Shown one piece after another: positions 33,981 to 54,156 of a DNA stretch of 64,000 nucleotides. Both the position numbers and the translations under genes were made by a program. The notes under the pieces are model-generated. The model had not been told where the DNA came from, did no database searches, and saw nothing but the letters and a program-made list of their open reading frames with translations. The number at the start of each line of letters is the position of its first letter. The stretch's first letter is position 1. The DNA lies in IMG/VR virus record IMGVR_UViG_3300042308_001511, positions 62,001-126,000 of that record, one strand, 5' to 3'.

Positions 33981-34694
33981 ATGATACACTTACTATGGTG
34001 TACTTTGAGACCATCTCAGTTCAATCATGCACACGCACAATGGATTGAGAGAGCTGATAATTCTGAAGTTGTTACCACTTATGTGGCAGTTAATTGGAAA
34101 GAACATGCGGATGAGGTCAAACAGTACCTTGATACATCCAGAAATTATGTTATGGTAGTTAACACTAACCAAATAGGCGTTTGTTATCCATCTTACCAAT
34201 TGAGTTCCTCATTGGGAACAAAGATGGGTTCATGTGTAGATGAAGACATTGTTGTTTTTGCAAGTGATGACTTCCTTCCACCTATGGGATGGGATACCTA
34301 TCTCTTAGAACAATTGTCTGGTAAAGGAGAAGCAGCATTGATGGTACGTGATGGGTACCAATTACCGGATTCATCTAATATGTTACATCCTGCAGTTACT
34401 ATTCCAATTATGACATATTCGTGTCTTAGAAGGATGAATGGTGTTATATACCACCCTTCTTATGGACATATGTTCAGTGATTGTGAACTTTATAATAACT
34501 TAGTAGATCTTGGTCTTTTGATTGATAATCGTATGTCGGACGAGACGGTTTTTGAACATATGCATCATGCTGCTGGTAAAAGGAATGCGGACCAGGCGGA
34601 TCAGATGTATCATATGAGGTGGGCACAAGATGAGGTCAATTGGAACAAAAGACGTGTACTCTCTATTGAGGATAGAATAAAAATTGAAATATGA
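33981..34694 (+). CDS. GT2-like glycosyltransferase
   Basis: ASDDF (xDD), FSDCEL, FEHMH. Confidence 0.65.
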   Translation: MIHLLWCTLRPSQFNHAHAQWIERADNSEVVTTYVAVNWKEHADEVKQYLDTSRNYVMVVNTNQIGVCYPSYQLSSSLGTKMGSCVDEDIVVFASDDFLPPMGWDTYLLEQLSGKGEAALMVRDGYQLPDSSNMLHPAVTIPIMTYSCLRRMNGVIYHPSYGHMFSDCELYNNLVDLGLLIDNRMSDETVFEHMHHAAGKRNADQADQMYHMRWAQDEVNWNKRRVLSIEDRIKIEI

Positions 34695-35431
34695 AAATAA
34701 CATTTTTTACAACCTCAACTTTCTCTGATATACAGGAATATCAAACTGCATGTATAAGGAAATTCTTTCCTCAATCTCAACACATAAAGTTTGATGGACG
34801 AAATGGCTGGTTTTCTGTTTGGTACAGATGGTTGGATTACTCAATGTCGGTTGATTCTGATTGGTATGTTCATATAGATGAGGATTGCTTTATAACTTCA
34901 GCGGATCAAATATTAGAGCTTATTTCGGATATGGAGAAAAATGGTATCGATATTGCAGGTCCACCTGACGGTCACTTCGAATATAGATCCGGAAACCATA
35001 TGGCATTGAATGCATTTTTTATGGTTATGAATCGTCGATGTATAGAAGCTTGGGCAAATAGAGTAATTATTCCTCAGTTTCGAGAAGAATGGATAGAAGA
35101 ATATCCTTTTGATAAAAGGAATGGTACTCGTTATGAGTATGATATGGAGTTTGGATCTTCCGGAAAACCATTGGGTATGATATGGAAGCCAGAGACAGAA
35201 CCTTACTATGATTTCTTTTGGGTTTTGAAGGATGCAGGTTTAAAATTCCGTTATCTCGAACCGGTATTTGGTGAAGAACTTCAGACTACTGATTTGTTGG
35301 CAGGTTCTGTAACACATCTGTGGCATCAGAGAGAGAGGTTTGCGGATTATGTAGTTTCTCCACTACATAGTATGACAAATCGTAATAGGTACGAACTTAT
35401 GATAGATAAAATTAAAAAAACTATTCTCTAA
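34691..35431 (+). CDS. GT-A-like glycosyltransferase
   Basis: HIDEDCF DxD motif; THLWH. Confidence 0.55.
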   Translation: MKITFFTTSTFSDIQEYQTACIRKFFPQSQHIKFDGRNGWFSVWYRWLDYSMSVDSDWYVHIDEDCFITSADQILELISDMEKNGIDIAGPPDGHFEYRSGNHMALNAFFMVMNRRCIEAWANRVIIPQFREEWIEEYPFDKRNGTRYEYDMEFGSSGKPLGMIWKPETEPYYDFFWVLKDAGLKFRYLEPVFGEELQTTDLLAGSVTHLWHQRERFADYVVSPLHSMTNRNRYELMIDKIKKTIL

Positions 35432-35435
35432 AAAT

Positions 35436-36125
35436 ATGAAAACATATGTTTATATAAATGTGGCAGTTATGGGTACGGTCAACTCGGTTCTCTCAAAACT
35501 TTTGTCTAATGTAAGAAAAAGTGGTCTGTACGAATTCTGTGATGGAATATATTTAGTTGTTAATGGTGATAGGTCTTTGTTGAATGTAGATTTATCCGGT
35601 GATAAGATTAACGTGATTGAAAACGGAAATGATCTCTCTGTGTGTGAGTTTCCAACTATAACAAAAATTTTCGAACATTCATTGAAAGAGGATTTCCGTG
35701 TTCTTTATATACACACAAAAGGTGTATCAAAGGGACATCCCTTCATTGAAGATTGGACAAGCCTTTTGGCATACTTCAACGTTACTAAATGGAAGGATCG
35801 TCTATCCGAATTAGAATCAAATGATTGTACCGGTATAAACCACTTCGGTAATAAAGAGGATGTTTACACACATCCTGCATACTGGGGATATGGGAAGACT
35901 CCTGTACATTATAGTGGAAACTTCTGGTGGTCAAAATCAGAACATATAAGAACTCTTGCACACCCGATAAGTTGGGCACCAGATGGTAATCTTTTTAGGT
36001 GGAGGATGATGGCAGAGATGTGGGTATGTTCCAGTAGTGTTGGTAAGTACCATTGTGCGTATAACTCTAACGTCGACCACTATCAGAACCCTTATCCTGC
36101 ATCTATATATGAACTAAACGATTAG
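35436..36125 (+). CDS. glycosyltransferase-like protein
   Basis: YIHTKG, HYSGNFWW, AEMW motifs; lies in the GT cluster. Confidence 0.5.
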   Translation: MKTYVYINVAVMGTVNSVLSKLLSNVRKSGLYEFCDGIYLVVNGDRSLLNVDLSGDKINVIENGNDLSVCEFPTITKIFEHSLKEDFRVLYIHTKGVSKGHPFIEDWTSLLAYFNVTKWKDRLSELESNDCTGINHFGNKEDVYTHPAYWGYGKTPVHYSGNFWWSKSEHIRTLAHPISWAPDGNLFRWRMMAEMWVCSSSVGKYHCAYNSNVDHYQNPYPASIYELND

Positions 36126-36800
36126 AGATTCTAACATAGCTATCATCTTTGGTTGTGGCGATATGTCTGTTTTATCTCTTCTGTAAGAATTATGAGTATA
36201 AACACCAGGTACTCCTTTCAGAGCATTTGCTGACACGTCCCACATATCTGATGGTTTATATTCTAAAGGAATTCCATAAGTATTATTCCAATGTACTAAT
36301 AATTGTCTAACTGATTCAATTTGTGCGTCTGTATAAGCGTGATAATACTTATGTCCTTTATAAGGTTTATCCAATTCACATACTTGTGAATTGGGTATTT
36401 CTCTATTAACGTAGTTTATAAATTTATTACCTACTTTTGTCAATGGTCCCCAGTTACAAATCTCAATACCAATAGATATCTTATCAATATTTTGATAAGG
36501 CACACCTACCGATTTAAATACATCGGGTTTGATACCCAAATGATATGCCCAATACTTAGATGAAAATGCTTGACAAATTTCTCCATCAAAAGTATCTTTG
36601 GATAATCCATTACCTGAAATTGTAACACACGTTGCAATTCTACCTCTATCATCAGAATCCCACATTTTTATTGTTGCTGGTCCGGATGAGTTTCCTGCGG
36701 TATGGTGTAATACAATCTGAAATTTCTTAGTTTCTTCCTTAATGTATTGGACTTCCATCATTGGAATCTGTTTAATATTTTTAGTATCTAACTTTTTCAT
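36114..36800 (-). CDS. N-acetylmuramoyl-L-alanine amidase (putative endolysin)
   Basis: IVLHHTA, WAYH, SIGIEI, YTDAQI, TH...KTD Amidase_2 motifs. Confidence 0.88.
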   Translation of the reverse strand: MKKLDTKNIKQIPMMEVQYIKEETKKFQIVLHHTAGNSSGPATIKMWDSDDRGRIATCVTISGNGLSKDTFDGEICQAFSSKYWAYHLGIKPDVFKSVGVPYQNIDKISIGIEICNWGPLTKVGNKFINYVNREIPNSQVCELDKPYKGHKYYHAYTDAQIESVRQLLVHWNNTYGIPLEYKPSDMWDVSANALKGVPGVYTHNSYRRDKTDISPQPKMIAMLESLIV

Positions 36801-36805
36801 TTTTG

Positions 36806-37450: not shown

Positions 37451-37471
37451 TTTCTTTACTTATGTTTTTTT

Positions 37472-42612: not shown

Positions 42613-44565
42613 ATGAGAATTGTATACATAACACCACACCTTTCCACAGGAGGAATGCCAGAATACCTTAGGAGAAAAGTTGAACTACTAAAAGATGACC
42701 ATGATGTGTGGGTGGTCGAGAAAAGTTTTGAACCTGCGTATAGATCGATAAGAGATAAAATAGAGTCTCTTATTGGTGAAAGACTTGTATCTCTAAATGG
42801 TAATAACGAAATTTTACTAAAACTAATTTCCGAGGTAAACCCAGATGTTATACACTTTGAGGAGTTATCCGATTATCACTTTGAACCGGCACTTCTTGAC
42901 CTTATATACACACCTGATCGTGAATATTTAATATTTGATACACTACACGATTCTTCGATAGATTATACCGAGAAAAGGTACATACCTGACAAAATGTTAG
43001 TTGTTAGTCCTTGGCAGGTTAAGAACTTCTTACCGCTCGGTATACCGGTTGAGATGTTAGAACATGAAATTTTAGCAGGTGAAAGAAATCGTGGTTTACT
43101 TTCTGAACTAGGTTTAGATCCTTCCCGTAAGCATATACTTCAGGTTGGTTTATTCTCACGTAGAAAGAATCAATCTGAGACAATAGAATTAGCCAAACTT
43201 ATGCCTGGTGTAGATTTTCACTTTGTTGGAAATCAAACAGACAATTACAGACAATATTGGGAACCTTTGTTGAATAATCTTCCATCTAATTGTAAGATAT
43301 GGGGTGAGAGATCGGATGCTGAAAAATTCTACTCTTGTATGGATTGTGTAATATTTCCATCGAGAGGTGAGTATGGTGACCGGGAGACTAACCCTTTAGT
43401 AATAAGGGAAGCAATGGCTTGGAATGTTCCACTTTTCTTACGTGATAGAGACTTCTATATGGGTATGTATTCGGAGTCTTCAATGGTTAGATTTATGCAC
43501 GAAGAAGTAGAAAAAAATGTGATAGAACTCACAGATTTTATAAAATTAGAAAATAAAGAAATTATGAAAACAGAAAACTTAACAGATGAATTCTTCAAAA
43601 GAAAACTTTTTGAAATATCATTTTCATCGGAAACTAACCAAATAGACTTCAAATATTTAGAACAACCGACACTGGAATGTATGGTTTGTATAAGAGACAT
43701 CGATACAGAGGTGCCAATTTATTCTTTTGATTCTAAATTTGAATCTGGTTCTACCGTTTGGTGTGTTCCTATACCAAAACCATACTACGACTTCCAGGAC
43801 AATCCTAACTTTGGTGGTTTTCTATATGACTTCTACATCGATGGTGAGAGAAAGTATGTTCAGACAACTAGAATAAAACCGGCGTCGATAATCAAAGAAA
43901 AATTCAGAGTCGAATCGTTTGAACCAATATTCGTTAACTACGAACAGTTCTTCACCGACAAAATTTATGACAATTTCCTATTAGGTGGAGAGATAGGAAC
44001 AGTATTAGACATCGGTGCTAACATAGGTCTATTCACAGAACTTGCTATTCGTAAAGGTGCATCTGAGGTTGTTTCAGTAGAGATAAACGAAAATGCAATT
44101 GGTATATTCGAAGATATTCACTCGGGTAGAGAAAATGTAAGACTAGTTAAGAAGGCAGTATACGACAAAACTGGTGAAATGGAAATACACACAGATCCTA
44201 ACAACTCATTAGTGGGTTCGGTTTTTCACGATCACACTGCTGGTTTATCAGAGACAGTTATTGTTCCATCAATAAGTATCGATGATCTTATGGCTGAGTA
44301 TAATTTGGAAGATATTGGTCTTGTTAAGATAGATGTAGAAGGATCAGAATATGCCATATTTGATGGTATGTCTGACGAAACACTTGACAAACTGAATAAT
44401 ATAATACTTGAATTCCACGATAACTTTGGAGGTAGACTTAGAGACTCAATAACAAAAAGATTAGATGGTAAATTTGATTACAAAATATACCAGGACGATT
44501 GTAAAAATCCTGCAAGTGAGTGGGAAGAAAGAGGTACAATATTCGCTAAAAAACATATTAAATAA
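42613..44565 (+). CDS. GT4-type glycosyltransferase fused to FkbM methyltransferase
   Basis: PHLSTGGMP, RKNQ, FPS...E.NPLVIREA; LDIGANIG, KIDVEGSE, EFH. Confidence 0.88.
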   Translation: MRIVYITPHLSTGGMPEYLRRKVELLKDDHDVWVVEKSFEPAYRSIRDKIESLIGERLVSLNGNNEILLKLISEVNPDVIHFEELSDYHFEPALLDLIYTPDREYLIFDTLHDSSIDYTEKRYIPDKMLVVSPWQVKNFLPLGIPVEMLEHEILAGERNRGLLSELGLDPSRKHILQVGLFSRRKNQSETIELAKLMPGVDFHFVGNQTDNYRQYWEPLLNNLPSNCKIWGERSDAEKFYSCMDCVIFPSRGEYGDRETNPLVIREAMAWNVPLFLRDRDFYMGMYSESSMVRFMHEEVEKNVIELTDFIKLENKEIMKTENLTDEFFKRKLFEISFSSETNQIDFKYLEQPTLECMVCIRDIDTEVPIYSFDSKFESGSTVWCVPIPKPYYDFQDNPNFGGFLYDFYIDGERKYVQTTRIKPASIIKEKFRVESFEPIFVNYEQFFTDKIYDNFLLGGEIGTVLDIGANIGLFTELAIRKGASEVVSVEINENAIGIFEDIHSGRENVRLVKKAVYDKTGEMEIHTDPNNSLVGSVFHDHTAGLSETVIVPSISIDDLMAEYNLEDIGLVKIDVEGSEYAIFDGMSDETLDKLNNIILEFHDNFGGRLRDSITKRLDGKFDYKIYQDDCKNPASEWEERGTIFAKKHIK

Positions 44566-44577
44566 TTCGAAAAGGTA

Positions 44578-45252
44578 ATGATTGTAGGTAATGGACTTAT
44601 TGCAAAATCTTTCTCTATTTTTAGAGAGGATAGTAATATTATTATTTTCGCATCTGGTGTTTCTAGCTCTTTGTGTGATGACCCTTTTGAATTCAAAAGG
44701 GAGATAGATATGTTATGTGGATTGAACCAAAATTGTAGGATTATTTACTTTAGTACTGCTTCTTTGTCGGATGGTAGTTTTGAAAGTCCTTATATACGAC
44801 ATAAAATTGAAATGGAACGTATTTTAATGGATAGATTCAAAAATTATTTGATACTTAGATTACCCACGGTTGTCGGTAGTGGTGGAAATTCAACAAACCT
44901 TTTCAATCATTTTATAAATTGTATATCAAATGATTTGTGTATAAAGGTTAATGTGAATCAATATAGATCATTAATCGATGCAGATGACCTTTATACATTA
45001 ACAAAAGGTATTATACTTTCTGATTTCTTAGGTATTGTTGATATATCATTGGATAACCAGTCTACTGTTGGTGAAATTGTTGCTGATATAGAGAGTGTTT
45101 TAGGAATAAATTTCAGAAAAGAGCTTATAAATTCTCATCAAAACCACCCGATATCCAATCAACTATTAAAGGATTTGATACGTGAAGACTTCTATAAAAT
45201 AGACAGACCGGACTATAATATAAGGTTGATAAAAAAATATCAAAATAAATGA
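44578..45252 (+). CDS. NAD-dependent epimerase/dehydratase-like protein
   Basis: IVGNGLIA, FASGVS, YFST, YIRHK (YxxxK), LRLP. Confidence 0.75.
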   Translation: MIVGNGLIAKSFSIFREDSNIIIFASGVSSSLCDDPFEFKREIDMLCGLNQNCRIIYFSTASLSDGSFESPYIRHKIEMERILMDRFKNYLILRLPTVVGSGGNSTNLFNHFINCISNDLCIKVNVNQYRSLIDADDLYTLTKGIILSDFLGIVDISLDNQSTVGEIVADIESVLGINFRKELINSHQNHPISNQLLKDLIREDFYKIDRPDYNIRLIKKYQNK

Positions 45253-45956
45253 AACTCAGTGTTATAATACCGTGTTACAACTTCGAATCATATCTTGATA
45301 AGTGTATACAGAGTGTTCTCGAACAGGAAACAAATTTCTATTACGAAATAATAGTTGGTGATGACTGTTCTTCGGATTCATCAGCAACAATACTTTCGAA
45401 TTATATCGGTCGTATATCATACTATGTGAATCAAAATAACTTTGGTTATGGTGAAAATACGGTAAAGTTAATAAGTCTATGTAGAGGCGAATACATAACT
45501 TATCTCGATGGAGATGATTTCCTTACAGATAATCAAAAGTTCCAAAAACAGATTGACTTTTTAGACGCAAATCCAGAATATGTAATGCATAGTACTGGTT
45601 GTTTCTATGCAACACCAGAGGGAGAATTTTCTGGAACTATAATAACACCTGTGATTGAGGAGCCAACAACAGAAGAACTTTTATCGACTAATTACGTAGG
45701 ATTTGGAAGAACTTTCCGAAATATTAAAAATATTTCGTTTGAGTGGATGAAGGATATTAAGTTTCATGATTGGGCCATTAATTTCGAACTATCTTTGTTA
45801 GGAAAGATAAGGTGTGAGAATTTTGTATCTGGTGGATATAGGATATCCGGTAATGGCATAATAACTAGTCTCGATGATGGTGATATCTATAATCATAATC
45901 AAATTTGTATGGAAAAACTAGCTTACAGACTAAACGATTTTAAAAATAAGAATTGA
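45249..45956 (+). CDS. GT2 glycosyltransferase
   Basis: SVIIPCYN, GDDCSSD, LDGDD. Confidence 0.92.
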   Translation: MKLSVIIPCYNFESYLDKCIQSVLEQETNFYYEIIVGDDCSSDSSATILSNYIGRISYYVNQNNFGYGENTVKLISLCRGEYITYLDGDDFLTDNQKFQKQIDFLDANPEYVMHSTGCFYATPEGEFSGTIITPVIEEPTTEELLSTNYVGFGRTFRNIKNISFEWMKDIKFHDWAINFELSLLGKIRCENFVSGGYRISGNGIITSLDDGDIYNHNQICMEKLAYRLNDFKNKN

Positions 45957-45960
45957 TAAT

Positions 45961-48276
45961 ATGAATGTTCAAAAGATAATACAAGTAACTCCGGGTGTAA
46001 TGCAAATACCACCAACAGGATGGGGTGCGGTAGAAAAAATTATATGGGAGTATACTAAATCTCTTCGTTCGGTTGGATATGACGTGGAAATACTTTATAC
46101 AGATGATGTTTCTAATAGTGATAATCAAATTGTACATGTTCATATGGCAAATCTTGCGAATATTCTAAATGAAAGAGGAATTGAATATGTTTTTTCACTA
46201 CACGACCACCACGTAGAACATTTTGGTAAAGACTCTCAATGTTATAAAGATAACTATGATGCTATCAAAAATTCGAAAATTACATTCGTTCACTCACCAC
46301 ATCTTATTGAGTATTTCGATAATATGTCTAACATAGTTTATTTACAACATGGTGTGAACAACGAAGACTACATATTTTTAGATCGTTCGGAGATGGTTCG
46401 TAGGTCTCCTGGTATTGTTATGATGGCTAATAACGGACTCGGTGGTGATTCACTTTATGATAGGAAAGGATTTTTGATTGGAATTGATGCTGCCAATAGG
46501 TTACAACTTCCTATTACTATAATATGTCCAAGTAGTAACCGTGAATTCTTTGAATATCACAAAGTATCTTATGATAAACTTCAGATTATTTACGATTTGA
46601 ATTACGAAGATTCAATTAAAGAGCTTTCTAAACATACATTATTCTTAAATCCTTCGATTATAGAAGCAGGTCATCCTAACCTAACGGTTGTTGAGTCTTT
46701 ATCGTGTGGAATACCTGTTGTTGGTACATCTTATGTAGATGTCCCGGGACTTATTAGATGTAGTAGAGATTTAGAGGATGTAGTTTTGAAAATTGATGAG
46801 TGTCTATTTAAATATGATGGTTTGGTTGAATCTATAAAACAAACTAGAGAATCTTTGTCGTGGAATATTGTTGTCACTAAAATGTTACAATATTATAAAC
46901 GTGTTTATGAAATTTCGGAAAAATCACAATTAGAATGGCAATACAAAAACACAAAAATACTTAGACTACCTAAACAGGAAAAATCAGGAATTCAGGTTGA
47001 TTTCAAAAACGGAAGAACATTTGTTAAAACATCACTACACTCTCAGGGACTCAGTGCAGTTTTCCGTGACAACAAAACCAACTCTATAATATTTGAAACT
47101 ACCATAGGTAAAACTCCGGGTAATTGGGCGTATATGTATACACCGGTTGACCGATTTGTGGATTGGGAGGTTTCTGTTAACTTTGGAACAATTCCTTTAC
47201 ACGTAGAGCGTATGGATCTAAAAAGAAAGAAGGTTCTTGTCACTGGAAATCCTGACATATCATCTTTAGTTGAATTCAGTCTAAAAACTGGTGCATTTTT
47301 GACTCTAAGAGATTTTAAAAACGGATACTTCTGTTACGACCCTGATGCTAATTCGGATGATTTCTATACTGTATTTAATGAACAACAGATTAAAGACTAC
47401 TTCACAATTTGTCCTAGAGTAGTGGATAAGTTACTTCTAAAATCAGGATCTGCGGCACTGGGTGATACAATAGCATTTATACCATATGCACAGAAGTGGG
47501 CAGCCAGTAAAGGTATTGTTGCCGATGTAGATTGTGCTTGGTCTGATATATTTAAATCTACAGAGTATCCAAACCTTTGTTTCGTTGGAAGGGATGTTTC
47601 GATAGAGAACTATTCAAATATTTGGAGATTTGAATATCTATTTGATCGTCCATTACAGAAAGGATACTCGGATCAGTTCGGTTTAGAATATAAAGAGATT
47701 CCTGCAATGATAAGGAAATCAGGTAAAGATAATCCTGTTAATGAAAGATATGTTTGTCTGGGTGTTCAGACTACAACACAGTGTAAGTATTGGAATCGTG
47801 TTGGTGGATGGGATAAACTTTGTGAGATGTTGGAGTCTGAAGGTATAAAAGTTGTTTCGTTGGATAAATATGAAGTTTTTGGAATTGATGGTTATTGGAA
47901 TAGTCTTCCTGAAAAATCCGACAAAAAAGTAGGTATGGAATTCTCCGAGGTTATAAGATATATCGAACATTGTGATGCTTTCATAGGTGTTAGTAGTGGA
48001 TTGGGATGGTTAGCATATGGTCTCGATAAACAAGTGGTTATGATATCCGGAACAACTGTAAAAAATAATGAATTTACTATAAACAACCACCGTGTGTCAC
48101 CACCGGATAATGTTTGTAATGGTTGTTTCAACAAACCACACCTTTATAATTTTGATGCAGGAAACTGGTTATGGTGCCCGGTCTATTCCGGAACTGATAA
48201 AAGGTTTGAGTGTACAACTTCTATTTCACCAGAGATGGTATTCGAGGCGGTTATGGCGGCACTTGGTGAGTCTTAA
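45961..48276 (+). CDS. GT4-like domain fused to autotransporter-heptosyltransferase (TibC/Aah)-like domain
   Basis: IPP.GWGAVE, EAGHPNL; ALGDTIAFIP, KYWN..GW, FIGVSSGLGWLA, CNGC...CP...FECT four-Cys cluster. Confidence 0.8.
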   Translation: MNVQKIIQVTPGVMQIPPTGWGAVEKIIWEYTKSLRSVGYDVEILYTDDVSNSDNQIVHVHMANLANILNERGIEYVFSLHDHHVEHFGKDSQCYKDNYDAIKNSKITFVHSPHLIEYFDNMSNIVYLQHGVNNEDYIFLDRSEMVRRSPGIVMMANNGLGGDSLYDRKGFLIGIDAANRLQLPITIICPSSNREFFEYHKVSYDKLQIIYDLNYEDSIKELSKHTLFLNPSIIEAGHPNLTVVESLSCGIPVVGTSYVDVPGLIRCSRDLEDVVLKIDECLFKYDGLVESIKQTRESLSWNIVVTKMLQYYKRVYEISEKSQLEWQYKNTKILRLPKQEKSGIQVDFKNGRTFVKTSLHSQGLSAVFRDNKTNSIIFETTIGKTPGNWAYMYTPVDRFVDWEVSVNFGTIPLHVERMDLKRKKVLVTGNPDISSLVEFSLKTGAFLTLRDFKNGYFCYDPDANSDDFYTVFNEQQIKDYFTICPRVVDKLLLKSGSAALGDTIAFIPYAQKWAASKGIVADVDCAWSDIFKSTEYPNLCFVGRDVSIENYSNIWRFEYLFDRPLQKGYSDQFGLEYKEIPAMIRKSGKDNPVNERYVCLGVQTTTQCKYWNRVGGWDKLCEMLESEGIKVVSLDKYEVFGIDGYWNSLPEKSDKKVGMEFSEVIRYIEHCDAFIGVSSGLGWLAYGLDKQVVMISGTTVKNNEFTINNHRVSPPDNVCNGCFNKPHLYNFDAGNWLWCPVYSGTDKRFECTTSISPEMVFEAVMAALGES

Positions 48277-48668: not shown

Positions 48669-48906
48669 CGATTTTATGTATTATAACCTCGGCTTCTGTT
48701 TCAATGACCACTCTAGCACCACAACTCAATATTGGTTTTTGATTACCGGATCCACAATACAACACTCTGCTCGGGCCGAGTATTTCGACCTCGTTGCAGT
48801 ATGTGTTTTTCTTACCCTGTTTCACCGTTATCACTGGTAGATCAGTCCCTTTAGTTTTATTGGAACGTATGTGATGTTGGTTTATGTGTATTCTGGTTTT
48901 CATCAC
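48646..48906 (-). CDS. conserved phage hypothetical protein
   Basis: RIHINQH.IR.N...PVITVK...LSCGARV. Confidence 0.7.
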   Translation of the reverse strand: MMKTRIHINQHHIRSNKTKGTDLPVITVKQGKKNTYCNEVEILGPSRVLYCGSGNQKPILSCGARVVIETEAEVIIHKIDGETDKE

Positions 48907-49304
48907 TTCAGTTTTGCAAAGGCAGCACCAACTACCTTTTTATCTGCAGGTAAGTCTGTAAATGCTTTCATCACCATTCCAATGTTATTTACACCATCAG
49001 ATATCAGTTGTCTAACTTTATCTTCAATCTCTTCTACCGACATCTGTTTTGGTAGGTATGTTTCAATTATAGCTAGTTCTGTTGTAGTCTCGTCGGATGG
49101 AAATTTAGAATTCGTTTCATCAAGACTCTTTTTTGTTTTTGTTATAATTTTCAGTACGTCTTCATCAGACATATTTTCAATACCTGTATTTTTTTCAATA
49201 GTTTGTATCTCTCCTTTGATAACAGATAAGAGATTTTTACTCACGCTGTCTTTTGCTTTGAATGCAGTCATATAGTCTGCATTGATTCTTTCTTTTAGTG
49301 TCAT
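48903..49304 (-). CDS. GatB/YqeY domain protein
   Basis: LKERI..D...A.KAKD, YLPKQMS.EEI, G.VMK, AD.K.V. Confidence 0.88.
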   Translation of the reverse strand: MTLKERINADYMTAFKAKDSVSKNLLSVIKGEIQTIEKNTGIENMSDEDVLKIITKTKKSLDETNSKFPSDETTTELAIIETYLPKQMSVEEIEDKVRQLISDGVNNIGMVMKAFTDLPADKKVVGAAFAKLK

Positions 49305-49324
49305 TTTTTATTATTTTTTTGTTA

Positions 49325-50530
49325 TTATTGTTTTGTCATTATATTTGGATCTATACCCTTCAATATCAACCTTGCATTCTCTAATCTGTAGGTCTCTTTG
49401 GCAAGTTTCTCCTTAACTATGCCATAAACATCTTTACCCTGTATCAACGCCATAACTGCAGAAAAGTTTTCACTCTTCCTGTATAATTGTGCGTACCTTT
49501 TTCTCATAAGACCTTCTCTCACAGAATTATCCCAATCAAAACCATCTGCCATAGTCTGATAAACTTCGTAGTCACTCATTATAGAATTTACTCTTCTATC
49601 AACCTCTTTAGTAACTGCGGCTATTATCTGCTCTACCCTTATGTGAGACTCTTTATCTTCCTCCGGTATCTGTGCCATAACATCATCTATTTGCTCATCT
49701 AATATGTAAGCTATTAGTCTGTTCTCACGGTAAAGATCGTCTGTTAGAAGTCCGTGTAGTGAAAAATACCAAGCGGTTTTCATCTTCACAAATAATCCAT
49801 CCAAATCCACTACCCATCCTTCCATATCTTCAACGGACTTACACATCTCTACAAGTTCATCAAGAGTATAATCATATTTCACGGCAGTTCTTATAGAACC
49901 TATTTTATCCTTATAGTCGTCCAAGTCTAAATACTCACCAGTTTTGTTGTTTCTAAGTCTAAGTAGTATTAGCTCTTCTTTGGCATACCTAAGTACTATT
50001 CTATTGCTTGGTGCAACATATTCAAATACTGCAACGAGGTCGTTATCAATAGACCAGTCAACAAATTTCTTTATTTCATAGTTATTGTTGTATATAGAAA
50101 GCATTCCTACCGCTTGGTCGGACTCGAATGACATTTTAGACTTAGCAAACACATTTCCGTTTGGTAGTCTTATGAAAGATCCAACAGAACCGTCCTCTTT
50201 AGAATATACAGATTTTACTTTTCTATCTTTTACTAAGGAATATTGTGTTTCTTCAACTTGGTTTAGATTGAAGAATTTGTGAAGTAGTCTGTATGTTTTG
50301 TAATTTCCGTCGTAATCGAAAACATAAACGAGACCTCGCATTTCCCATGCTAAGTTATCGTTGAAATCTTTGTATGATGCCAATCTATAATTGAATATAG
50401 ACACATTATACCCATCTACTATGAGTTTAGCCTCATAGAAAGCAGCATCGAGATACTGGTCTATTTCTGCCACGTATCTTTTGCCGATAGTCATAGCCAC
50501 AGCTTCTTCGTATGTTGGTATTTTATACAT
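49325..50530 (-). CDS. rnlA: T4 Rnl1-like RNA ligase
   Basis: EMRG, KFFNLNQ, KEDGS, FEY..P.NRIV, EGWV, VKMKT.WY..LH. Confidence 0.9.
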   Translation of the reverse strand: MYKIPTYEEAVAMTIGKRYVAEIDQYLDAAFYEAKLIVDGYNVSIFNYRLASYKDFNDNLAWEMRGLVYVFDYDGNYKTYRLLHKFFNLNQVEETQYSLVKDRKVKSVYSKEDGSVGSFIRLPNGNVFAKSKMSFESDQAVGMLSIYNNNYEIKKFVDWSIDNDLVAVFEYVAPSNRIVLRYAKEELILLRLRNNKTGEYLDLDDYKDKIGSIRTAVKYDYTLDELVEMCKSVEDMEGWVVDLDGLFVKMKTAWYFSLHGLLTDDLYRENRLIAYILDEQIDDVMAQIPEEDKESHIRVEQIIAAVTKEVDRRVNSIMSDYEVYQTMADGFDWDNSVREGLMRKRYAQLYRKSENFSAVMALIQGKDVYGIVKEKLAKETYRLENARLILKGIDPNIMTKQ

Positions 50531-50560
50531 AATGCAAATATAATAAATAATATATAAAGA

Positions 50561-51205
50561 ATGAAACATTTAGACACATTTCAACTTTTTAATGAGAAAA
50601 TGGTGCTTGATAATTATGATGAGTATGCCAAATTAGTAGCGGATGCCTACGAAGCAGCACCAGAATATGATGAAACAATGATATCATCATATAAATCTCT
50701 TATAAATCACGCAGTTAATAAACTATATCCACAAATAATTGGTATGGGTATTGATATACAATTTGTTGACTATGATCCATATAGTAGTAGAAATGATATG
50801 GCAGAAGATGTTGAAAAGAATAAGCTACTAAGAATAAGTTCATTATTCAACGAACATCCTGGTATTGATAAAAAGATATTTACCAAAGAAGATAATTTGA
50901 AATTTAGAGCTGTACACGATTGGTATACACATATAATATGTAATCAAGATTTTGGTCTAAAAGGAGAACTAAAGGCATATAATACACACGCCACATTGGC
51001 ACCACCCGATGCACTTCCTGCACTATTTACCGAAGTAGTCGGACAAGCTTGTTATGCAATTGATAGAGGTAGTGTTGGTGAAAATGGTGATTTTATACCT
51101 GGATTCGGTGGGCAAAAGTTTGCCAGATTGAATGGATTTGATTATGGAAATGTTGGTATTGTTTCTGGATATGATATTTCGGGTAAAAAACTTTTCAAAA
51201 AATAA
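50561..51205 (+). CDS. putative head-internal virion protein with HDxxxH motif
   Basis: TAATATATA-N4-ATG; starts MKHLDTFQLFNE; FRAVHDWYTH...GE..AY..H...TEVVGQ. Confidence 0.65.
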   Translation: MKHLDTFQLFNEKMVLDNYDEYAKLVADAYEAAPEYDETMISSYKSLINHAVNKLYPQIIGMGIDIQFVDYDPYSSRNDMAEDVEKNKLLRISSLFNEHPGIDKKIFTKEDNLKFRAVHDWYTHIICNQDFGLKGELKAYNTHATLAPPDALPALFTEVVGQACYAIDRGSVGENGDFIPGFGGQKFARLNGFDYGNVGIVSGYDISGKKLFKK

Positions 51206-51233: not shown

Positions 51234-51266
51234 AACTATATTTGTAGAAACTAAAATAAATAAGGT

Positions 51267-51593: not shown

Positions 51594-51630
51594 TAACAGC
51601 ACTTCGGTGCTTTTAATTTTTTTTTTGGTT

Positions 51631-52101: not shown

Positions 52102-52105
52102 TCAG

Positions 52106-52279: not shown

Positions 52280-52355
52280 AATTGGCAGCTTATGTGCAAA
52301 GAATCGGAAGAAATAAATTTAGAGTATTTGTATAATTTATCCAGACGTATTCTAA

Positions 52356-52772
52356 TTATTTAACTTTGTTATGTCTTTCAATAACACGTCCTCTTAGTTC
52401 TGTTGTAGAAAATGAGTGTCTACGCTCATTGTAGTGTGTATCTATATGAGTGAGTTCCTTTCCTGTGAAATCTTTTTCCCTATACTCCTCACCTACGACT
52501 CTTATATTTATTGGATAAGAAAGAAGTATATCCATAAGTTCTTTCTCAGTCTGGTATATTACAATCTCATCTACGTATTTACAAGCGTCTAATTGTACGA
52601 ATCTCTCAAAAACTGATTGTATAGGTCGGTTCTTCTCAGGTCTATCTATAGTAGGGTCTGTTTGGAGTCCTACTATTAGGTAATCACATACACTCTTCGA
52701 CTCTTTTAACATCATTATGTGTCCTGCGTGAAACAGGTCAAAACACGAACAGGTGAATCCAACTTTTTTCAT
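52356..52772 (-). CDS. HxGH nucleotidyltransferase (TagD / HldE domain II-like)
   Basis: FDLFHAGH, LIVGL, K.RP....ER, VDE, FSTT. Confidence 0.88.
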   Translation of the reverse strand: MKKVGFTCSCFDLFHAGHIMMLKESKSVCDYLIVGLQTDPTIDRPEKNRPIQSVFERFVQLDACKYVDEIVIYQTEKELMDILLSYPINIRVVGEEYREKDFTGKELTHIDTHYNERRHSFSTTELRGRVIERHNKVK

Positions 52773-52990
52773 AGAGGTCTTATGTTTTCTGGAAGTTCCT
52801 TCTCGTCAATCTGGTATTCACTAACGGAATTTTTTGTGTGTCTTACCATCAGGAATATAAAGTCTGTTTGACCGTCTTTCTTCACTCTTGTGTGGTAATA
52901 CTCATTTATTGTGCCCATAGCATGCACGGTCCCTAATAAATTTCTATCCTCTAGTGACTGAGGATCTCTTTTGTAAATTCTTGTACTCAT
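52769..52990 (-). CDS. hypothetical protein
   Basis: 73 aa, ATGA overlap. Confidence 0.55.
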   Translation of the reverse strand: MSTRIYKRDPQSLEDRNLLGTVHAMGTINEYYHTRVKKDGQTDFIFLMVRHTKNSVSEYQIDEKELPENIRPL

Positions 52991-53020
52991 ACGAATTATT
53001 ATTAAAATAATTCAAAAAGT

Positions 53021-53209
53021 TTAGTCTAAAGAACCTTTTACTGCCTCATATTGTTTTTCTGTTAGTAGTTTAACGGTTTTTCCATCGTATTCTACACGTT
53101 CTACGAATTTTCCGGTTTTAAGTGTTTTTTGTAGTGATATTATAAAACCATTAGTACCTTCATACTTCCTAATCCTCTTGTTGAGTTCCATTTTTTCCTG
53201 TATATCCAT
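53021..53209 (-). CDS. hypothetical protein
   Basis: YEGTNGFIISL...LTEKQ. Confidence 0.6.
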   Translation of the reverse strand: MDIQEKMELNKRIRKYEGTNGFIISLQKTLKTGKFVERVEYDGKTVKLLTEKQYEAVKGSLD

Positions 53210-53504
53210 ACTTCTTATCAATTTCAATTTGAATCTTATTCAACTCCTCTACGACTTCCTGTTCAACATCGGAATCTATATCATTTAGTATCTGATGTGC
53301 TCGGTGGTTTGCACGAACCATTATCTCAGTGAAATCGAGAACGTTTTGTTTATCTATTTCCATAACCAAGTCTTCTTCTAATATAGACTCACGGAAATAG
53401 AAGGCAATCTTTATTATTTCCGCGAGTTTGGTGGTCTGAGTGTCTGTTTGTTCGATACGCCACTTCATTTTGTTTATGATTGGTTGTAAATAGTTATCTT
53501 TCAT
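53169..53504 (-). CDS. hypothetical protein
   Basis: Start probably MKDNYLQ. Confidence 0.55.
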   Translation of the reverse strand: MKDNYLQPIINKMKWRIEQTDTQTTKLAEIIKIAFYFRESILEEDLVMEIDKQNVLDFTEIMVRANHRAHQILNDIDSDVEQEVVEELNKIQIEIDKKYGYTGKNGTQQED

Positions 53505-53547
53505 ATTTTTTTTATAAACATAATTAAAAAAAGACTGTAAAACAAGC

Positions 53548-54156
53548 ATGAGATTCGAAGATTTTAATACAAATCCAAACTGGGATGAATCCATACTTAT
53601 GAATTATAGATGTTTCTATGATGAAATATGGAATGGTGGTGAATATGAGAGATATGATGTAGGTATAATGCCTGGTGATGTCGTTGTGGATTGTGGTGCT
53701 AGTATCGGTATATTTACCAGATATGCTCTTAGTAGAGGAGCCAGTCGTGTTATTTCTATAGAAGCTGATACTGATGTACATAAATATTTAGTAATAAATA
53801 CAGAAGGTCAAAATGTACTTTCGTTAAATGGAACGGTTGGTGGAGATTGGGATATTGAATCTATTATGAATACGGCGGGAATAGAAAATATTGATTTTTT
53901 GAAAATTGATATAGAGGGTTGGGAGTTTGACCTTCTTTCTAAAATAAGTGAAGACACACTTTCCAAAGTACGTAAAATATCGATGGAGGTTCACTTATGG
54001 GGAGTTTTTGAATACATATCAGAAGTACAGACTGCTGCAAATTCGTGTTTAAGACTCACTTCATTATTAGAAAGACTTACGAAGGCCGGATTCCGAATTT
54101 CTTTTGAAAGAGCACACACGAACACGTGTCTCTATATGTTATACGCAAAGCGTTAG
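53548..54156 (+). CDS. FkbM-family methyltransferase
   Basis: VVDCGASIG, FLKIDIEGWE, MEVH. Confidence 0.85.
   Translation: MRFEDFNTNPNWDESILMNYRCFYDEIWNGGEYERYDVGIMPGDVVVDCGASIGIFTRYALSRGASRVISIEADTDVHKYLVINTEGQNVLSLNGTVGGDWDIESIMNTAGIENIDFLKIDIEGWEFDLLSKISEDTLSKVRKISMEVHLWGVFEYISEVQTAANSCLRLTSLLERLTKAGFRISFERAHTNTCLYMLYAKR

What the first reader, a model, noticed from the sequence alone, without database searches (positions are those of the whole stretch)
33981..54156. Phage-encoded glycan pathway with TibC-like heptosyltransferase and O-methyltransferases
Seen in sequence: three GT-like genes (33981-36125), GT4-FkbM, an epimerase-like gene, GT2 and a GT4-TibC-like fusion with four Cys (42613-48276), an HxGH nucleotidyltransferase (52356), a second FkbM (53548) and another GT at 5029. 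Established: TibC/Aah are iron-containing enzymes that O-heptosylate serines of adhesins using ADP-heptose. Inference: glycosylation of Ser/Thr-rich virion fibres (26683, 59934) with methylated glycans, or remodelling of the host surface.
Basis: partly seen in the sequence, partly recalled or inferred. Interest (0 to 1): 0.65.

Follow-up and report, generated by a model that had tools for sequence, protein, structure and literature searches.

The report
Phage sugar-coating module for serine-collagen fibres
A huge freshwater phage carries a conserved set of soluble sugar-adding enzymes, one closely resembling the TibC enzyme that puts heptose on bacterial adhesins, and across phage genomes this set travels with giant tail fibres made of glycine-serine-serine "collagen", which is probably what it glycosylates.

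Summary
Window 42613-48276 is one same-strand block:
- a GT4-FkbM methyltransferase fusion
- a short SDR-like protein
- a GT2
- a 771-aa protein that joins a GT4-like domain to a complete TibC/AAH-type (BAHT) enzyme

The BAHT part keeps the catalytic Asp, the Thr/Lys/Trp donor contacts and the four Cys. Its model aligns to TibC at Z 31.5. An HldC-like nucleotidyltransferase (52356) and a second FkbM (53548) are real.

Of the three "GT-like" genes, one has a GT-A fold, one is DUF8361 and one remains weak. The GT at 5029 is unconfirmed.

New findings:
- At least 555 viral contigs carry the GT4-BAHT fusion.
- It almost always lies downstream of a GT4-FkbM gene, and the two bracket a variable cassette of sugar-modifying genes.
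- The same genome, outside the window, encodes a 2,709-aa tail fibre with about 1,280 residues of Gly-[Ser/Thr]-Ser collagen triplets.
- That fibre type co-occurs with BAHT: 9/11 against 1/8 near-complete genomes, p=0.005. This figure is not corrected for phylogeny.

My best reading is cytoplasmic O-glycosylation of this fibre with a methyl-capped glycan. The target and the donor sugar are inferred, not shown.

The parts
42613..44565 (+). GT4 glycosyltransferase (about residues 1-330) fused to an FkbM-family SAM methyltransferase (residues 463-602). This is the conserved upstream anchor gene of the module.
   Evidence: Pfam PF00534 and PF13692 at E about 1e-8, PF05050 at E 1.5e-16. TIGR01444 scores 96 bits against a cut-off of 37.7. 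A homologue lies upstream on the same strand in 69 of 80 viral loci that carry the BAHT fusion and in L007-L013.
44578..45252 (+). Short (224 aa) SDR-like protein, a candidate sugar reductase or epimerase. It belongs to the variable cassette.
   Evidence: Pfam Epimerase at E 7e-5, C-terminal part only. The sequence shows an N-terminal GNGxxA motif and S...Y72-x3-K76. It is not similar to the SDR half of the GT2-SDR fusion in the syntenic relative L012.
45249..45956 (+). Soluble GT2 (GT-A) glycosyltransferase. It belongs to the variable cassette.
   Evidence: PF00535 at E 2.4e-29. 55% identical to the N-terminal half of a 532-aa GT2-SDR fusion at the same position in L012. No predicted membrane segment.
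45961..48276 (+). 771-aa fusion. Residues 1-330 are a GT4-like retaining GT-B domain. Residues 344-427 form an eight-strand beta sandwich. Residues 433-771 are a TibC/AAH-type (BAHT) catalytic domain with a beta-hairpin and a Cys4 finger. This is the conserved downstream anchor gene.
   Evidence: phmmer against TibC (4RB4/4RAP) gives E 2e-31. TIGR04414 scores 197 bits against a cut-off of 200. AF2 pLDDT is 90.2 and pTM 0.80. VIA alignment of 340-771 to TibC gives Z 31.5, rmsd 3.0-3.3 A over 311-313 residues; 1-318 against BshA gives Z 26.7. D502, K609, W683, C719, C722, C739 and C751 are invariant in 43 homologues.
52356..52772 (-). HldC/TagD-like nucleotidyltransferase (138 aa) with a HAGH motif. 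It is the only sugar-nucleotidyltransferase candidate in the genome and a candidate activator of heptose-1-phosphate.
   Evidence: PF01467 at E 7e-14. TIGR02199 rfaE_dom_II scores 72 bits, below its equivalog cut-off of 181. phrog_7878 at E 1.6e-37. Single copy in the genome, and no PF00483 enzyme is present. An orthologue at 43% identity lies 6 kb from the module in L013.
53548..54156 (+). Stand-alone FkbM-family methyltransferase (202 aa).
   Evidence: TIGR01444 scores 65.5 bits against a cut-off of 37.7; PF05050 at E 2e-10.
34691..35431 (+). GT-A-fold protein with an invariant D63-E64-D65 motif, a candidate additional glycosyltransferase. Its link to the module is unproven.
   Evidence: AF2 pLDDT 91.9. 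Foldseek hits, at E 5e-6 to 1e-4, are GT-A enzymes: STIV A197, the glucosyltransferase domain of LH3, PBCV-1 A64R and COLGALT1. The family is highly conserved and almost entirely unannotated (110 clusters; a single member, P0165, carries a Pfam GT2 domain, PF13632).
35436..36125 (+). DUF8361 protein from a viral family found fused to GT17 and GT34 domains, possibly glycan-related. Its link to the module is unproven.
   Evidence: Atlas search by sequence features scores 0.97 to DUF8361 clusters. By structure, TM is 0.81-0.85 to DUF8361, to a 'glycosyltransferase' cluster, and to GT17 and GT34 fusion proteins. A homologue lies within 10 kb of the module in 3 of 80 loci.
33981..34694 (+). Conserved viral protein of unknown function. 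The GT-like call is weak.
   Evidence: Only phrog_14945 (glycosyltransferase) at E 6e-4. No hit in Pfam, NCBIfam or PDB. 590 homologous clusters, all unannotated. No profile similarity to the neighbouring gene.

Best explanation
The core at 42613-48276 is a soluble, cytoplasmic protein O-glycosylation module of a huge freshwater phage. The phage is T4-like by its gp32 and probably infects Bacteroidota.

Two conserved multi-domain enzymes bracket a variable set of sugar-tailoring genes. These enzymes are GT4-FkbM and GT4-BAHT. In this phage the variable set is a short SDR and a GT2.

Proposed mechanism (inferred):
1. The TibC-like domain puts the first sugar on serine hydroxyls of a rod-shaped virion protein. 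The sugar is probably a heptose, activated by the HldC-like enzyme at 52356 or supplied by the host.
2. The two GT4 domains and the GT2 extend the glycan.
3. The FkbM methyltransferases O-methylate and so cap it.

The most likely acceptor is the phage's own 2,709-aa collagen-like tail fibre at G000:C1:23296-31425, outside the window. Its triple-helix region is almost pure Gly-[Ser/Thr]-Ser. It has neither the proline nor the charge pairs that normally stabilise collagen, so dense O-glycosylation may be needed to fold, stiffen or shield it.

Shown: the enzyme identities, the fold, the conserved catalytic residues, the gene architecture, its spread across viral contigs, and the co-occurrence with the fibre type.

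Inferred: the acceptor, the donor sugar, the order of steps and the role of the glycan.
For: Enzyme identity:
- TibC match by sequence (E 2e-31), by profile (197 bits) and by fold (Z 31.5, including the N-terminal beta sandwich).
- The catalytic Asp (D502), the T605/K609 phosphate contacts, W683 and the Cys4 finger are all present. D502, K609, W683 and the four Cys are invariant and T605 nearly so in 43 homologues.

Spread and architecture:
- 376 homologous protein clusters (the 120 listed are nearly all full length) and at least 555 viral contigs carry the fusion.
- GT4-FkbM lies upstream on the same strand in 69 of 80 loci.
- Of 53 genes lying between the two anchor genes, Pfam matches include GT2 (8), FkbM (3), DegT (2), hexapeptide acetyltransferases (2) and single cases of GLF, RmlD, GT34, GNAT and a rhamnosyl O-methyltransferase. 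A variable cassette between conserved anchors is what a diversifying, exposed glycan would give.
- No module protein has a predicted membrane segment.

Acceptor candidate:
- Pfam Collagen at E 2e-162, 1,284 residues of GXY, Ser 29%, a C-terminus like tail fibre proteins and PHROG tail-fibre families.

Co-occurrence:
- 14 of 15 module-bearing contigs have collagen repeats, and all 12 sampled are 76-96% Ser+Thr at the X and Y positions.
- Of 15 contigs of 80 kb or more chosen only by a GSSGTS coding pattern, 12 have BAHT above its cut-off.
- Among near-complete genomes not chosen on that feature, the pattern is present in 9 of 11 with BAHT and 1 of 8 without (p=0.005).
- LR756502 lacks BAHT, and its collagen has ordinary mixed composition (GATGSQGIQ).

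Heptose supply:
- Besides the HldC-like gene, the genome has a GmhA-like and an HddA-like gene in a second glycan cluster.

Precedent in the literature:
- TibC and AAH modify Ser and not Thr (PMC4358343).
Against: - There is no direct evidence for any acceptor. The fibre gene lies 73 kb from the module.
- The predicted late-promoter motif TTTAATATATA stands before the fibre genes but is not present in exact form before 42613.
- Co-occurrence is imperfect. G004 and LR756504 have BAHT without the repeat. G033, G037 and G038 have the repeat without BAHT, although two of these contigs are incomplete.
- Co-occurrence is confounded by shared ancestry. Within close gp32 relatives alone p is 0.053.
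- The phage encodes no AIDA-type target repeat. TibC's known substrates are beta-helices, not collagen.
- The donor is uncertain. Arg286, the adenine contact, is Val here. The TIGR04414 score falls just under its cut-off. No HldE kinase, GmhB or NTP_transferase is present. The HldC-like gene occurs in only 6 of 12 complete BAHT-carrying genomes.
- The complex prediction of the BAHT domain with a (GSS)n 60-mer gave no answer.
Confidence: 0.5

Rival explanations
1. The module glycosylates other virion proteins, not the collagen-like fibre. Candidates are the major capsid or tail proteins, or the LamG-type fibres the first reader named (26683-28218, 59934-63998). This would parallel mycobacteriophages and chloroviruses.
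For: The enzymes are the same soluble set. The LamG proteins are about twice as rich in Ser+Thr as the genome median (23% against 12%) and look like receptor-binding proteins. Two BAHT-carrying genomes lack the G[ST]S repeat (G004 and LR756504), so some BAHT enzymes must have another target.
Against: The LamG proteins have no repeat or serine-rich tract. I measured no co-occurrence for them. The association with G[ST]S collagen is strong in both directions.
Confidence: 0.2
2. The module remodels a glycan of the host cell, such as LPS core, capsule or a host surface protein. This could block superinfection or alter the cell during infection.
For: GT9-type heptosyltransferases normally act on LPS core, and the Pfam GT9 family gives a weak hit (E 1.4e-6). 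Phage GT2 genes are often annotated as O-antigen conversion genes (phrog_841). A second glycan cluster with a GT10 fucosyltransferase lies elsewhere in the genome.
Against: The match is to the protein-modifying BAHT branch (TIGR04414 197 bits) rather than to WaaC (TIGR02193 16 bits). The protein has the beta sandwich and the Cys4 finger that TibC uses for protein-substrate handling. No module protein has a membrane segment, and the region shows no flippase, polymerase or polyprenyl-phosphate transferase. This reading does not explain the co-occurrence with a virion fibre type.
Confidence: 0.15
3. The enzymes build a free or small-molecule-linked methylated oligosaccharide, or glycosylate a non-virion phage protein, with no structural role.
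For: GT4 relatives by fold include small-molecule glycosyltransferases such as BshA, MshA, the tetrahydrobiopterin glucosyltransferase and SenB. FkbM enzymes occur in natural-product pathways.
Against: The BAHT domain is a protein O-glycosyltransferase type. The cassette sits between conserved anchor genes and has the gene content of surface-glycan loci. The module co-occurs with a fibre gene.
Confidence: 0.1
4. The glycosyltransferases hypermodify phage DNA, as the T4 glucosyltransferases act on hydroxymethylcytosine.
For: GT-B enzymes glycosylate DNA in T-even phages. Related contigs have dCMP deaminase or thymidylate-synthase-family genes near the module (L007, L013).
Against: The only thymidylate-synthase-family gene in this genome (window 25284-26168) passes the curated thymidylate synthase equivalog (327.9 against 327 bits). 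There is therefore no sign of a pyrimidine hydroxymethylase. The TibC-type domain, the methyltransferases and the aminosugar genes do not fit known DNA-glycosylation systems.
Confidence: 0.03

Closest known systems
TibC / AAH bacterial autotransporter heptosyltransferases (BAHT family, TIGR04414; PDB 4RAP, 4RB4)
   Same: - The catalytic domain shares the fold (Z 31.5).
- The N-terminal beta sandwich, the beta-hairpin insertion and the Cys4 'iron-finger' cysteines are present.
- So are the catalytic Asp (D502 for D110), the Thr/Lys phosphate contacts and the sugar-contact Trp.
- It is a soluble cytoplasmic enzyme.
   Different: - It is fused behind a complete GT4 domain (771 aa against 406 aa).
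- It is encoded by phages, not next to an autotransporter.
- The genome has no AIDA-type target repeat.
- The adenine-contact Arg286 is Val, and the thumb tip F265/V266 is G/Y.
- The profile score is 3 bits under the curated cut-off.
- Donor, oligomeric state and acceptor are untested.
Chlorovirus PBCV-1 capsid glycosylation enzymes (A064R: two rhamnosyltransferase domains plus a methyltransferase domain). The domain description is from my own knowledge; the PDB entries 2P6W, 2P72 and 2P73 appear.
   Same: - The virus encodes soluble multi-domain enzymes that join glycosyltransferase and O-methyltransferase domains.
- They build a methylated glycan on a virion protein in the cytoplasm, independently of host machinery.
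- The GT-A protein at 34691 resembles the A64R GT domain by fold.
   Different: - The host is a different domain of life.
- The enzyme families differ (GT4 and BAHT against GT-A).
- The PBCV-1 glycans are N-linked to the capsid protein.
- No sequence relationship to the core module was detected.
Mycobacteriophage virion glycosylation (Freeman et al. 2023, as cited in PMC12619734)
   Same: Phage-encoded glycosyltransferases decorate the phage's own structural proteins. That paper proposes the glycans act as a shield.
   Different: The mycobacteriophage targets are C-terminal extensions of the capsid and tail-tube subunits, not collagen repeats. No BAHT-type enzyme, FkbM pairing or variable cassette between conserved anchor genes is described there.
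Glycosylated collagen-like proteins: Bacillus BclA exosporium fibres and the vent-worm cuticle collagen with galactosyl-threonine (PMC11923368)
   Same: Gly-X-Y repeats have hydroxy-amino acids in place of hydroxyproline and carry O-glycans. In model peptides glycosylation turns a random coil into a triple helix.
   Different: Those repeats are Gly-Pro-Thr type. Here both X and Y are Ser or Thr, with almost no Pro or charged residues. The enzymes that glycosylate BclA are not BAHT-type as far as I know (own knowledge, not tested here).
Variable surface-glycan loci of bacteria, such as O-antigen, capsule and flagellin glycosylation islands (own knowledge)
   Same: Conserved flanking genes bracket a hypervariable set of GTs, aminotransferases, acetyltransferases, methyltransferases and sugar-nucleotide enzymes.
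   Different: There is no flippase, polymerase or lipid-carrier step. All proteins are soluble. The locus is viral.

Membership tests
BAHT (TibC/AAH) O-heptosyltransferases, TIGR04414 | Profile score over the curated cut-off (200 bits) | tested here: inconclusive
   The window protein scores 197.2 bits by hmmscan and 189 bits in the six-frame genome search, just under the cut-off. Homologues in other phages score 202-310 bits.
BAHT (TibC/AAH) O-heptosyltransferases, TIGR04414 | Catalytic base Asp110 and the donor contacts Thr226, Lys230 and Trp305 (PMC4358343) | tested here: met
   D502, T605, K609 and W683 align to these residues. D502, K609 and W683 are invariant and T605 nearly so in 43 homologues.
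BAHT (TibC/AAH) O-heptosyltransferases, TIGR04414 | Arg286 contacting adenine N1, the basis of ADP-sugar specificity | tested here: not met
   The aligned residue is V664. An Arg lies two positions later (R666), and the column is not conserved in the family.
BAHT (TibC/AAH) O-heptosyltransferases, TIGR04414 | Four-cysteine iron-finger (Cys339, 342, 358, 370) | tested here: met
   C719, C722, C739 and C751 align to them and are invariant. Iron binding itself cannot be tested here.
BAHT (TibC/AAH) O-heptosyltransferases, TIGR04414 | N-terminal flattened beta-barrel plus a GT-B-like catalytic domain with a beta-hairpin thumb | tested here: met
   The AF2 model has eight strands at 344-427 and a hairpin at 639-648. 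Residues 340-771 align to TibC residues 50-390 at Z 31.5. The thumb tip is G/Y rather than F/V, so the ring contact is uncertain.
BAHT (TibC/AAH) O-heptosyltransferases, TIGR04414 | Dodecameric ring | not testable with these tools
   A 12-mer exceeds the size limit of the complex tool. No experiment was possible.
BAHT (TibC/AAH) O-heptosyltransferases, TIGR04414 | Acceptor is an AIDA-type strand-loop-strand repeat of an autotransporter (TIGR04415), usually encoded next door | tested here: not met
   The 344-kb genome has no TIGR04415 match. The conserved neighbour is GT4-FkbM, not a beta-helix protein.
BAHT (TibC/AAH) O-heptosyltransferases, TIGR04414 | Transfers heptose from ADP-heptose to serine | not testable with these tools
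   The evidence is only indirect. It consists of an HldC-like gene in the window and GmhA-like and HddA-like genes elsewhere in the genome. The pathway is incomplete.
GT4 retaining GT-B glycosyltransferases | Two-Rossmann GT-B fold with a conserved acidic motif in the C-lobe | tested here: met
   Fusion residues 1-318 align to BshA at Z 26.7, with SPS, MshA, SdgB and TarM at Z 23-26. E235 and E245 are invariant. For the 650-aa protein, Pfam PF00534 and PF13692 score over their cut-offs.
FkbM methyltransferases (TIGR01444 / PF05050) | Profile score over the cut-off | tested here: met
   96.1 bits (42613 gene) and 65.5 bits (53548 gene) against a cut-off of 37.7.
HldC / RfaE domain II heptose-1-phosphate adenylyltransferase (TIGR02199) | Equivalog score over the cut-off (181.5 bits), plus the HxGH motif | tested here: not met
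   It scores 72 bits. That is the best of the cytidylyltransferase-like families but far under the cut-off, and TagD scores 57 bits. The HAGH motif is present. Superfamily membership (PF01467) is met. The substrate is undetermined.
Collagen triple-helix repeat proteins (PF01391), for the proposed acceptor outside the window | Long uninterrupted Gly-X-Y runs | tested here: met
   E 2.3e-162 over 10 stretches. The runs are 636, 132, 288 and 228 residues long. Whether a Pro-free, charge-free G-S-S sequence forms a triple helix is not testable here.

The most novel reading that the evidence does not exclude
A large clade of huge aquatic phages builds tail fibres from a collagen whose X and Y positions are almost all serine or threonine. 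This collagen would fold or stay rigid only because a dedicated phage-encoded machine coats it with methyl-capped O-glycans. In that machine a TibC-type enzyme has been re-targeted from beta-helical adhesins to a collagen rod. The variable gene cassette between the two conserved enzymes would then make fibre glycan 'serotypes' that diversify under selection from hosts or grazers. If so, glycosylation would replace hydroxyproline as the stabiliser of collagen in a virus, with the enzymes and the substrate identifiable from sequence alone.
Probability: 0.3. Interest if true: 0.85.

Novelty: new variant of a known kind. Interest (0 to 1): 0.68.

Why it matters
BAHT enzymes are known only as partners of virulence autotransporters in proteobacteria. 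In a full-text search for 'O-heptosyltransferase' together with 'phage', I found no paper describing them in phages.

What this work adds:
- The fold is the conserved core of a widespread phage glycosylation module, found on at least 555 viral contigs. The phage itself occurs in lake and river metagenomes from many studies.
- The module has a fixed architecture of two anchor genes around a variable cassette.
- There is a concrete candidate substrate that can be tested.

If the link to the Gly-Ser-Ser collagen fibre holds, it would give:
- a sequence-readable system for virion glycan diversity in uncultured huge phages
- a natural case of a glycosylation-dependent collagen
- enzymes that might be used to glycosylate designed collagen-like materials

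If the link fails, the module is still a new context for a well-studied enzyme family.

Tried and rejected
- A single-sequence scan of IMG/VR with the TibC domain found nothing. An alignment was needed.
- PDB sequence searches with the three 'GT-like' proteins gave nothing useful. The three are not paralogues, and a profile-profile comparison of genes 1 and 2 gave probability 0.2%.
- The gene at 5029-5880 has no family hit in Pfam, NCBIfam or PHROGs. A homologue lies within 10 kb of the module in 9 of 80 loci.
- The phage genome has no AIDA-type acceptor repeat (TIGR04415).
- A complete ADP-heptose pathway is not present. There is no HldE-type kinase, no GmhB-type phosphatase and no NTP_transferase. 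The heptose reading therefore rests on weak GmhA-like and HddA-like hits and on an HldC-like gene.
- DNA glycosylation is unlikely. The only thymidylate-synthase-family gene scores as a true thymidylate synthase.
- I looked for co-regulation through a shared promoter. The motif TTTAATATATA lies about 30 nt before 33 genes, including the fibre genes. It is not present in exact form before 42613. This is inconclusive.
- I considered the 1,535-aa protein just downstream of the fusion in L012 as an adjacent acceptor. It is not collagen-like and is not conserved at that position.
- The complex prediction of the BAHT domain (340-771) with a 60-residue G-S/T-S segment gave no answer, score 0.00. It is not evidence either way.
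- Metatranscriptome evidence is weak. One RNA library holds short contigs, 95% or more identical, on the GT4-FkbM, GT2 and BAHT genes. DNA carry-over cannot be excluded.

Full report
**Context**

The window is bases 62001-126000 of a 344,083-bp IMG/VR virus record that CheckV rates 91% complete. Its gp32-type ssDNA-binding protein (40913-41896, minus strand) is 70-72% identical to those of the 634-kb and 642-kb uncultured megaphages LR745206 and LR756502. Near-identical DNA occurs in lake, river and other freshwater metagenomes from more than a dozen studies.

A Bacteroidota host is likely but was not tested. The hints are these:
- the fibre tip resembles Flavobacterium phage tail fibres
- a related contig encodes a Por_Secre_tail domain
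- a recent paper describes large aquatic Bacteroidota phages with several core glycosyltransferases (PMC12619734)

**Checking the observation**

Family scans confirm most of the gene calls:

| Coordinates | Call | Key evidence |
|---|---|---|
| 42613-44565 | GT4 plus FkbM | TIGR01444 96 bits, cut-off 37.7 |
| 45249-45956 | GT2 | E 2e-29 |
| 52356-52772 | cytidylyltransferase-like, HAGH motif | best matches rfaE domain II (72 bits) and phrog_7878 (E 2e-37) |
| 53548-54156 | FkbM | TIGR01444 65.5 bits |
| 44578-45252 | short SDR-like | GNGxxA start and a YxxxK motif; Pfam match weak |

Between 36114 and 42553, and between 48273 and 52101, lie an amidase, gp32, YqeY, a T4-type RNA ligase and unknown genes, many on the other strand.

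The three "GT-like" genes at 33981-36125 have no Pfam, NCBIfam or PDB sequence match. They are not related to one another.
- 34691-35431 gives a confident model (pLDDT 91.9). Its closest folds are GT-A glycosyltransferases, and its DED motif is invariant in the family.
- 35436-36125 belongs to the viral family DUF8361, which occurs fused to GT17 and GT34 domains.
- 33981-34694 has only a PHROG hit at E 6e-4.
- The gene at 5029 matches nothing.

**The TibC-like protein**

The 771-aa product of 45961-48276 matches crystallised TibC at E 2e-31. It matches the curated BAHT model TIGR04414 at 197 bits, 3 bits under the cut-off.

I used the residue roles from the TibC structure paper (PMC4358343) and mapped them through the printed alignment:

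| TibC residue | Role | Here |
|---|---|---|
| Asp110 | catalytic base | D502 |
| Thr226, Lys230 | phosphate contacts | T605, K609 |
| Trp305 | sugar contact | W683 |
| Cys339, 342, 358, 370 | iron ligands | C719, C722, C739, C751 |
| Arg286 | adenine contact | V664 (not conserved) |
| Pro300 | stereoselectivity | Ser, as in AAH |
| Phe265, Val266 | thumb tip | G, Y |

D502, K609, W683 and the four cysteines are invariant and T605 is nearly invariant in an alignment of 43 homologues.

An AlphaFold model built on that alignment is confident (pLDDT 90.2, pTM 0.80). It shows three parts:
- a GT-B domain at residues 1-330
- an eight-strand beta sandwich at 344-427
- the BAHT catalytic domain with a hairpin and the cysteine knuckles

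Residues 340-771 align to TibC at Z 31.5 (rmsd 3.0-3.3 A, 311-313 residues). Residues 1-318 align to retaining GT4 enzymes such as BshA at Z 26.7, and also to the serine-modifying SdgB. The protein is therefore a full BAHT unit, including the domain TibC needs for its protein substrate, with an extra GT4 enzyme fused in front.

**A conserved viral module**

The fusion is not a one-off. The protein database holds 376 related clusters. Of the 120 listed, nearly all cover the full length at 42-65% identity, many on contigs of 100-594 kb. A scan of IMG/VR found at least 555 viral contigs that encode a full-length relative.

In every context I read (L007-L013), a GT4-FkbM gene lies upstream on the same strand. 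The same holds in 69 of 80 IMG/VR loci, and nearly all the exceptions are loci with little upstream sequence.

The two genes are adjacent in some phages and up to 7.8 kb apart in others. Nearly all the genes between them are on the same strand. Of 53 such genes scanned against Pfam, the matches include GT2 (8), FkbM (3), DegT aminotransferases (2), hexapeptide acetyltransferases (2), other methyltransferases including a rhamnosyl O-methyltransferase type, and single cases of UDP-galactopyranose mutase, RmlD, GT34, GNAT, a 2OG-Fe oxygenase and a MaoC dehydratase.

In the window the cassette is the SDR-like gene plus the GT2. In the closest syntenic relative it is a GT2-SDR fusion whose GT2 half is 55% identical to the window's GT2. 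Two conserved anchor genes around a changing set of sugar-tailoring genes is the pattern of loci that make exposed, diversifying glycans.

None of the module proteins has a predicted membrane segment.

**Where the sugar might come from**

- The genome has one nucleotidyltransferase candidate, the HldC-like gene at 52356. An orthologue lies 6 kb from the module in a distant relative.
- A second glycan cluster lies about 94 kb beyond the window's end (G000:C1, about 215.6-224.4 kb). It encodes a GT10 fucosyltransferase, two FkbM enzymes, a GT4, a GHMP kinase whose best match is the heptose-7-phosphate kinase HddA, a GmhA-like isomerase, another methyltransferase, two SDR enzymes and a GT2. The HddA and GmhA scores are far below their equivalog cut-offs.
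- There is no HldE-type kinase and no GmhB-type phosphatase.
- Among near-complete genomes, an HldC-like gene is present in 6 of 12 with BAHT and 1 of 5 without. A GmhA-like gene is present in 2 of 12 and 1 of 5.

Heptose is therefore a reasonable guess for the first sugar, but it is not established. The missing Arg286 leaves the nucleotide part of the donor open.

**The candidate acceptor**

I ranked all ORFs of the genome by Ser+Thr content. One stood far apart: a 2,709-aa protein at G000:C1:23296-31425 (minus strand, outside the window) with 28.8% Ser and 42.9% Ser+Thr.

- It has four blocks (636, 132, 288 and 228 residues) of almost pure Gly-[Ser/Thr]-Ser triplets, separated by globular inserts.
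- It ends in a globular region of about 850 residues that resembles phage tail fibre proteins.
- Pfam calls it collagen at E 2e-162, and PHROGs calls it tail fibre.
- Its neighbours are other Ser/Thr-rich fibre-like proteins.

The phage has no AIDA-type repeat, which is the known BAHT target.

**Does the fibre type travel with the enzyme?**

I ran three tests.

1. Starting from the enzyme. Of 15 long contigs chosen because they carry the fusion, 14 have collagen repeats. The exception is 39% complete. All 12 loci I sampled are of the same unusual type, with 76-96% Ser+Thr at the X and Y positions.
2. Starting from the fibre. Of 15 contigs of 80 kb or more chosen only because they contain a GSSGTS coding pattern, 12 have a BAHT match above the curated cut-off, including 4 of 4 that are at least 90% complete.
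3. A uniform DNA pattern of six consecutive GGN-WSN-WSN triplets, whose reversed control gave zero hits everywhere. I applied it to near-complete genomes that were not chosen on that feature. It is present in 9 of 11 genomes with BAHT and 1 of 8 without (Fisher one-sided p=0.005).

Further details from these tests:
- The closest relatives by gp32, LR745206 and LR756502, lack both features. The more distant LR756501 has both.
- LR756502 has collagen-like genes of ordinary mixed composition (GATGSQGIQ) and no BAHT.

Caveats:
- The genomes are related, so these counts are not independent. Within close gp32 relatives alone p is 0.053.
- There are exceptions both ways (G004, LR756504, G033, G037, G038).
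- Many contigs end inside the repeat, so assemblies break there.

**Why this would make sense**

TibC and AAH modify serine, not threonine, on a rod-shaped substrate. Collagen-like helices outside animals are normally held by proline or by Lys-Asp/Glu pairs. Threonine-rich ones are thought to rely on glycosylation, and (Gly-Pro-Thr)10 is a random coil until its threonines carry galactose. [quoted passage not shown] The fibre here has almost no proline or charge, only an occasional Arg. Dense O-glycosylation is a plausible requirement for folding or stiffness, and also a plausible shield. This step is inference.

**Rivals**

They would be needed anyway for the BAHT-carrying genomes without the repeat.
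- Host-surface remodelling fits the GT9 and GT2 labels. It does not fit the BAHT-specific features, the all-soluble enzymes, or the link to a fibre gene.
- DNA glycosylation is unlikely, because the only thymidylate-synthase-family gene scores as a genuine thymidylate synthase.

**Things that did not help**

- A complex prediction of the BAHT domain with a 60-residue repeat segment returned no answer.
- A strongly positioned motif, TTTAATATATA about 30 nt before the start codon, precedes 33 genes, including the collagen fibre and other fibre genes. It looks like a late promoter. The 42613 operon has only near matches, so co-regulation is neither shown nor excluded.
- One freshwater metatranscriptome holds short contigs on three of the module genes. 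This is weak evidence of transcription.

**Verdict**

- The gene identifications are largely right, and the TibC-like call is solid.
- The finding is better described as a conserved phage protein-glycosylation module than as a 20-kb pathway.
- I found no description of BAHT enzymes in phages.
- I rate it a new variant of known kinds, namely phage virion glycosylation and BAHT enzymes. The acceptor and the donor are open and directly testable.

Noticed in passing
G000:C1:215624-224352 (L006:5624-14352), outside the window: A second same-strand glycan cluster: a GT10 alpha-1,3-fucosyltransferase, two FkbM methyltransferases, a GT4, an HddA-like GHMP kinase, a GmhA-like SIS protein, a SAM methyltransferase, two SDR epimerase/dehydratases, and a GT2 with a weak SunS-like match. 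The phage therefore has at least two glycan gene sets.
   Followed up: partly
G000:C1:23296-31425 (L015:3296-11425, minus strand), outside the window: A 2,709-aa collagen-like tail fibre with about 1,280 residues of Gly-[Ser/Thr]-Ser triplets. Related phages have ORFs of this type up to 4,772 aa.
   Followed up: yes
Genome-wide; within the window only before the gene at 3103-3903(-): The motif TTTAATATATA begins about 25-33 nt before the start codon of 29 of the 33 genes that carry it, including the fibre genes. It is probably a phage late promoter, analogous to the T4 TATAAATA.
   Followed up: partly
IMG/VR contigs behind L096, L099, L101, L102, L106, L107 and G032, G033, G039: Many huge-phage contigs begin or end inside the G-[S/T]-S repeat. 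This repeat is a common assembly breakpoint, and completeness estimates for this clade may be affected.
   Followed up: no
window 31802-33922(+) and 58659-59705(+): The phage encodes a two-ring ClpB-type AAA+ chaperone and a full DnaJ with J, zinc-finger and C-terminal domains. Phage-encoded chaperones might serve the folding of giant fibres.
   Followed up: no
window 59934-63998(-), open at the window end (1,376 aa in the genome): A giant protein with five DUF5122 beta-propeller repeats, two LamG domains and Lcl_C domains. It is probably a receptor-binding or adhesin-like virion protein.
   Followed up: no
window 5885-7222(+) and 49325-50569(-), with YqeY at 48903-49304(-): Two different RNA ligase genes (the Rnl2-like PF09414 and the T4 Rnl1-like PF09511) and a YqeY/GatB-like protein. 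This suggests tRNA repair functions.
   Followed up: no
window 43987, inside the GT4-FkbM linker: Related strains in a river metagenome and in a metatranscriptome carry an extra 31-37 nt at this point, between the GT4 and FkbM domains. It is a length-variable linker (table 5c).
   Followed up: no
LR756504.1:457181-458230; G042:C1:160218-161354 and 278601-279659: Some megaphages have a stand-alone BAHT of about 390-400 aa without the GT4 fusion. One genome has both forms. LR756504 has the stand-alone form and no collagen repeat, so the stand-alone enzymes may have other targets.
   Followed up: partly
window 25284-26168(-): A thymidylate synthase that just passes its curated equivalog cut-off (327.9 against 327 bits). 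It lies beside the LamG fibre gene.
   Followed up: yes
window 4252-5025(+): A DprA-like DNA recombination-mediator protein (phrog_768, E 2e-11), immediately upstream of the unassigned 5029 gene.
   Followed up: no
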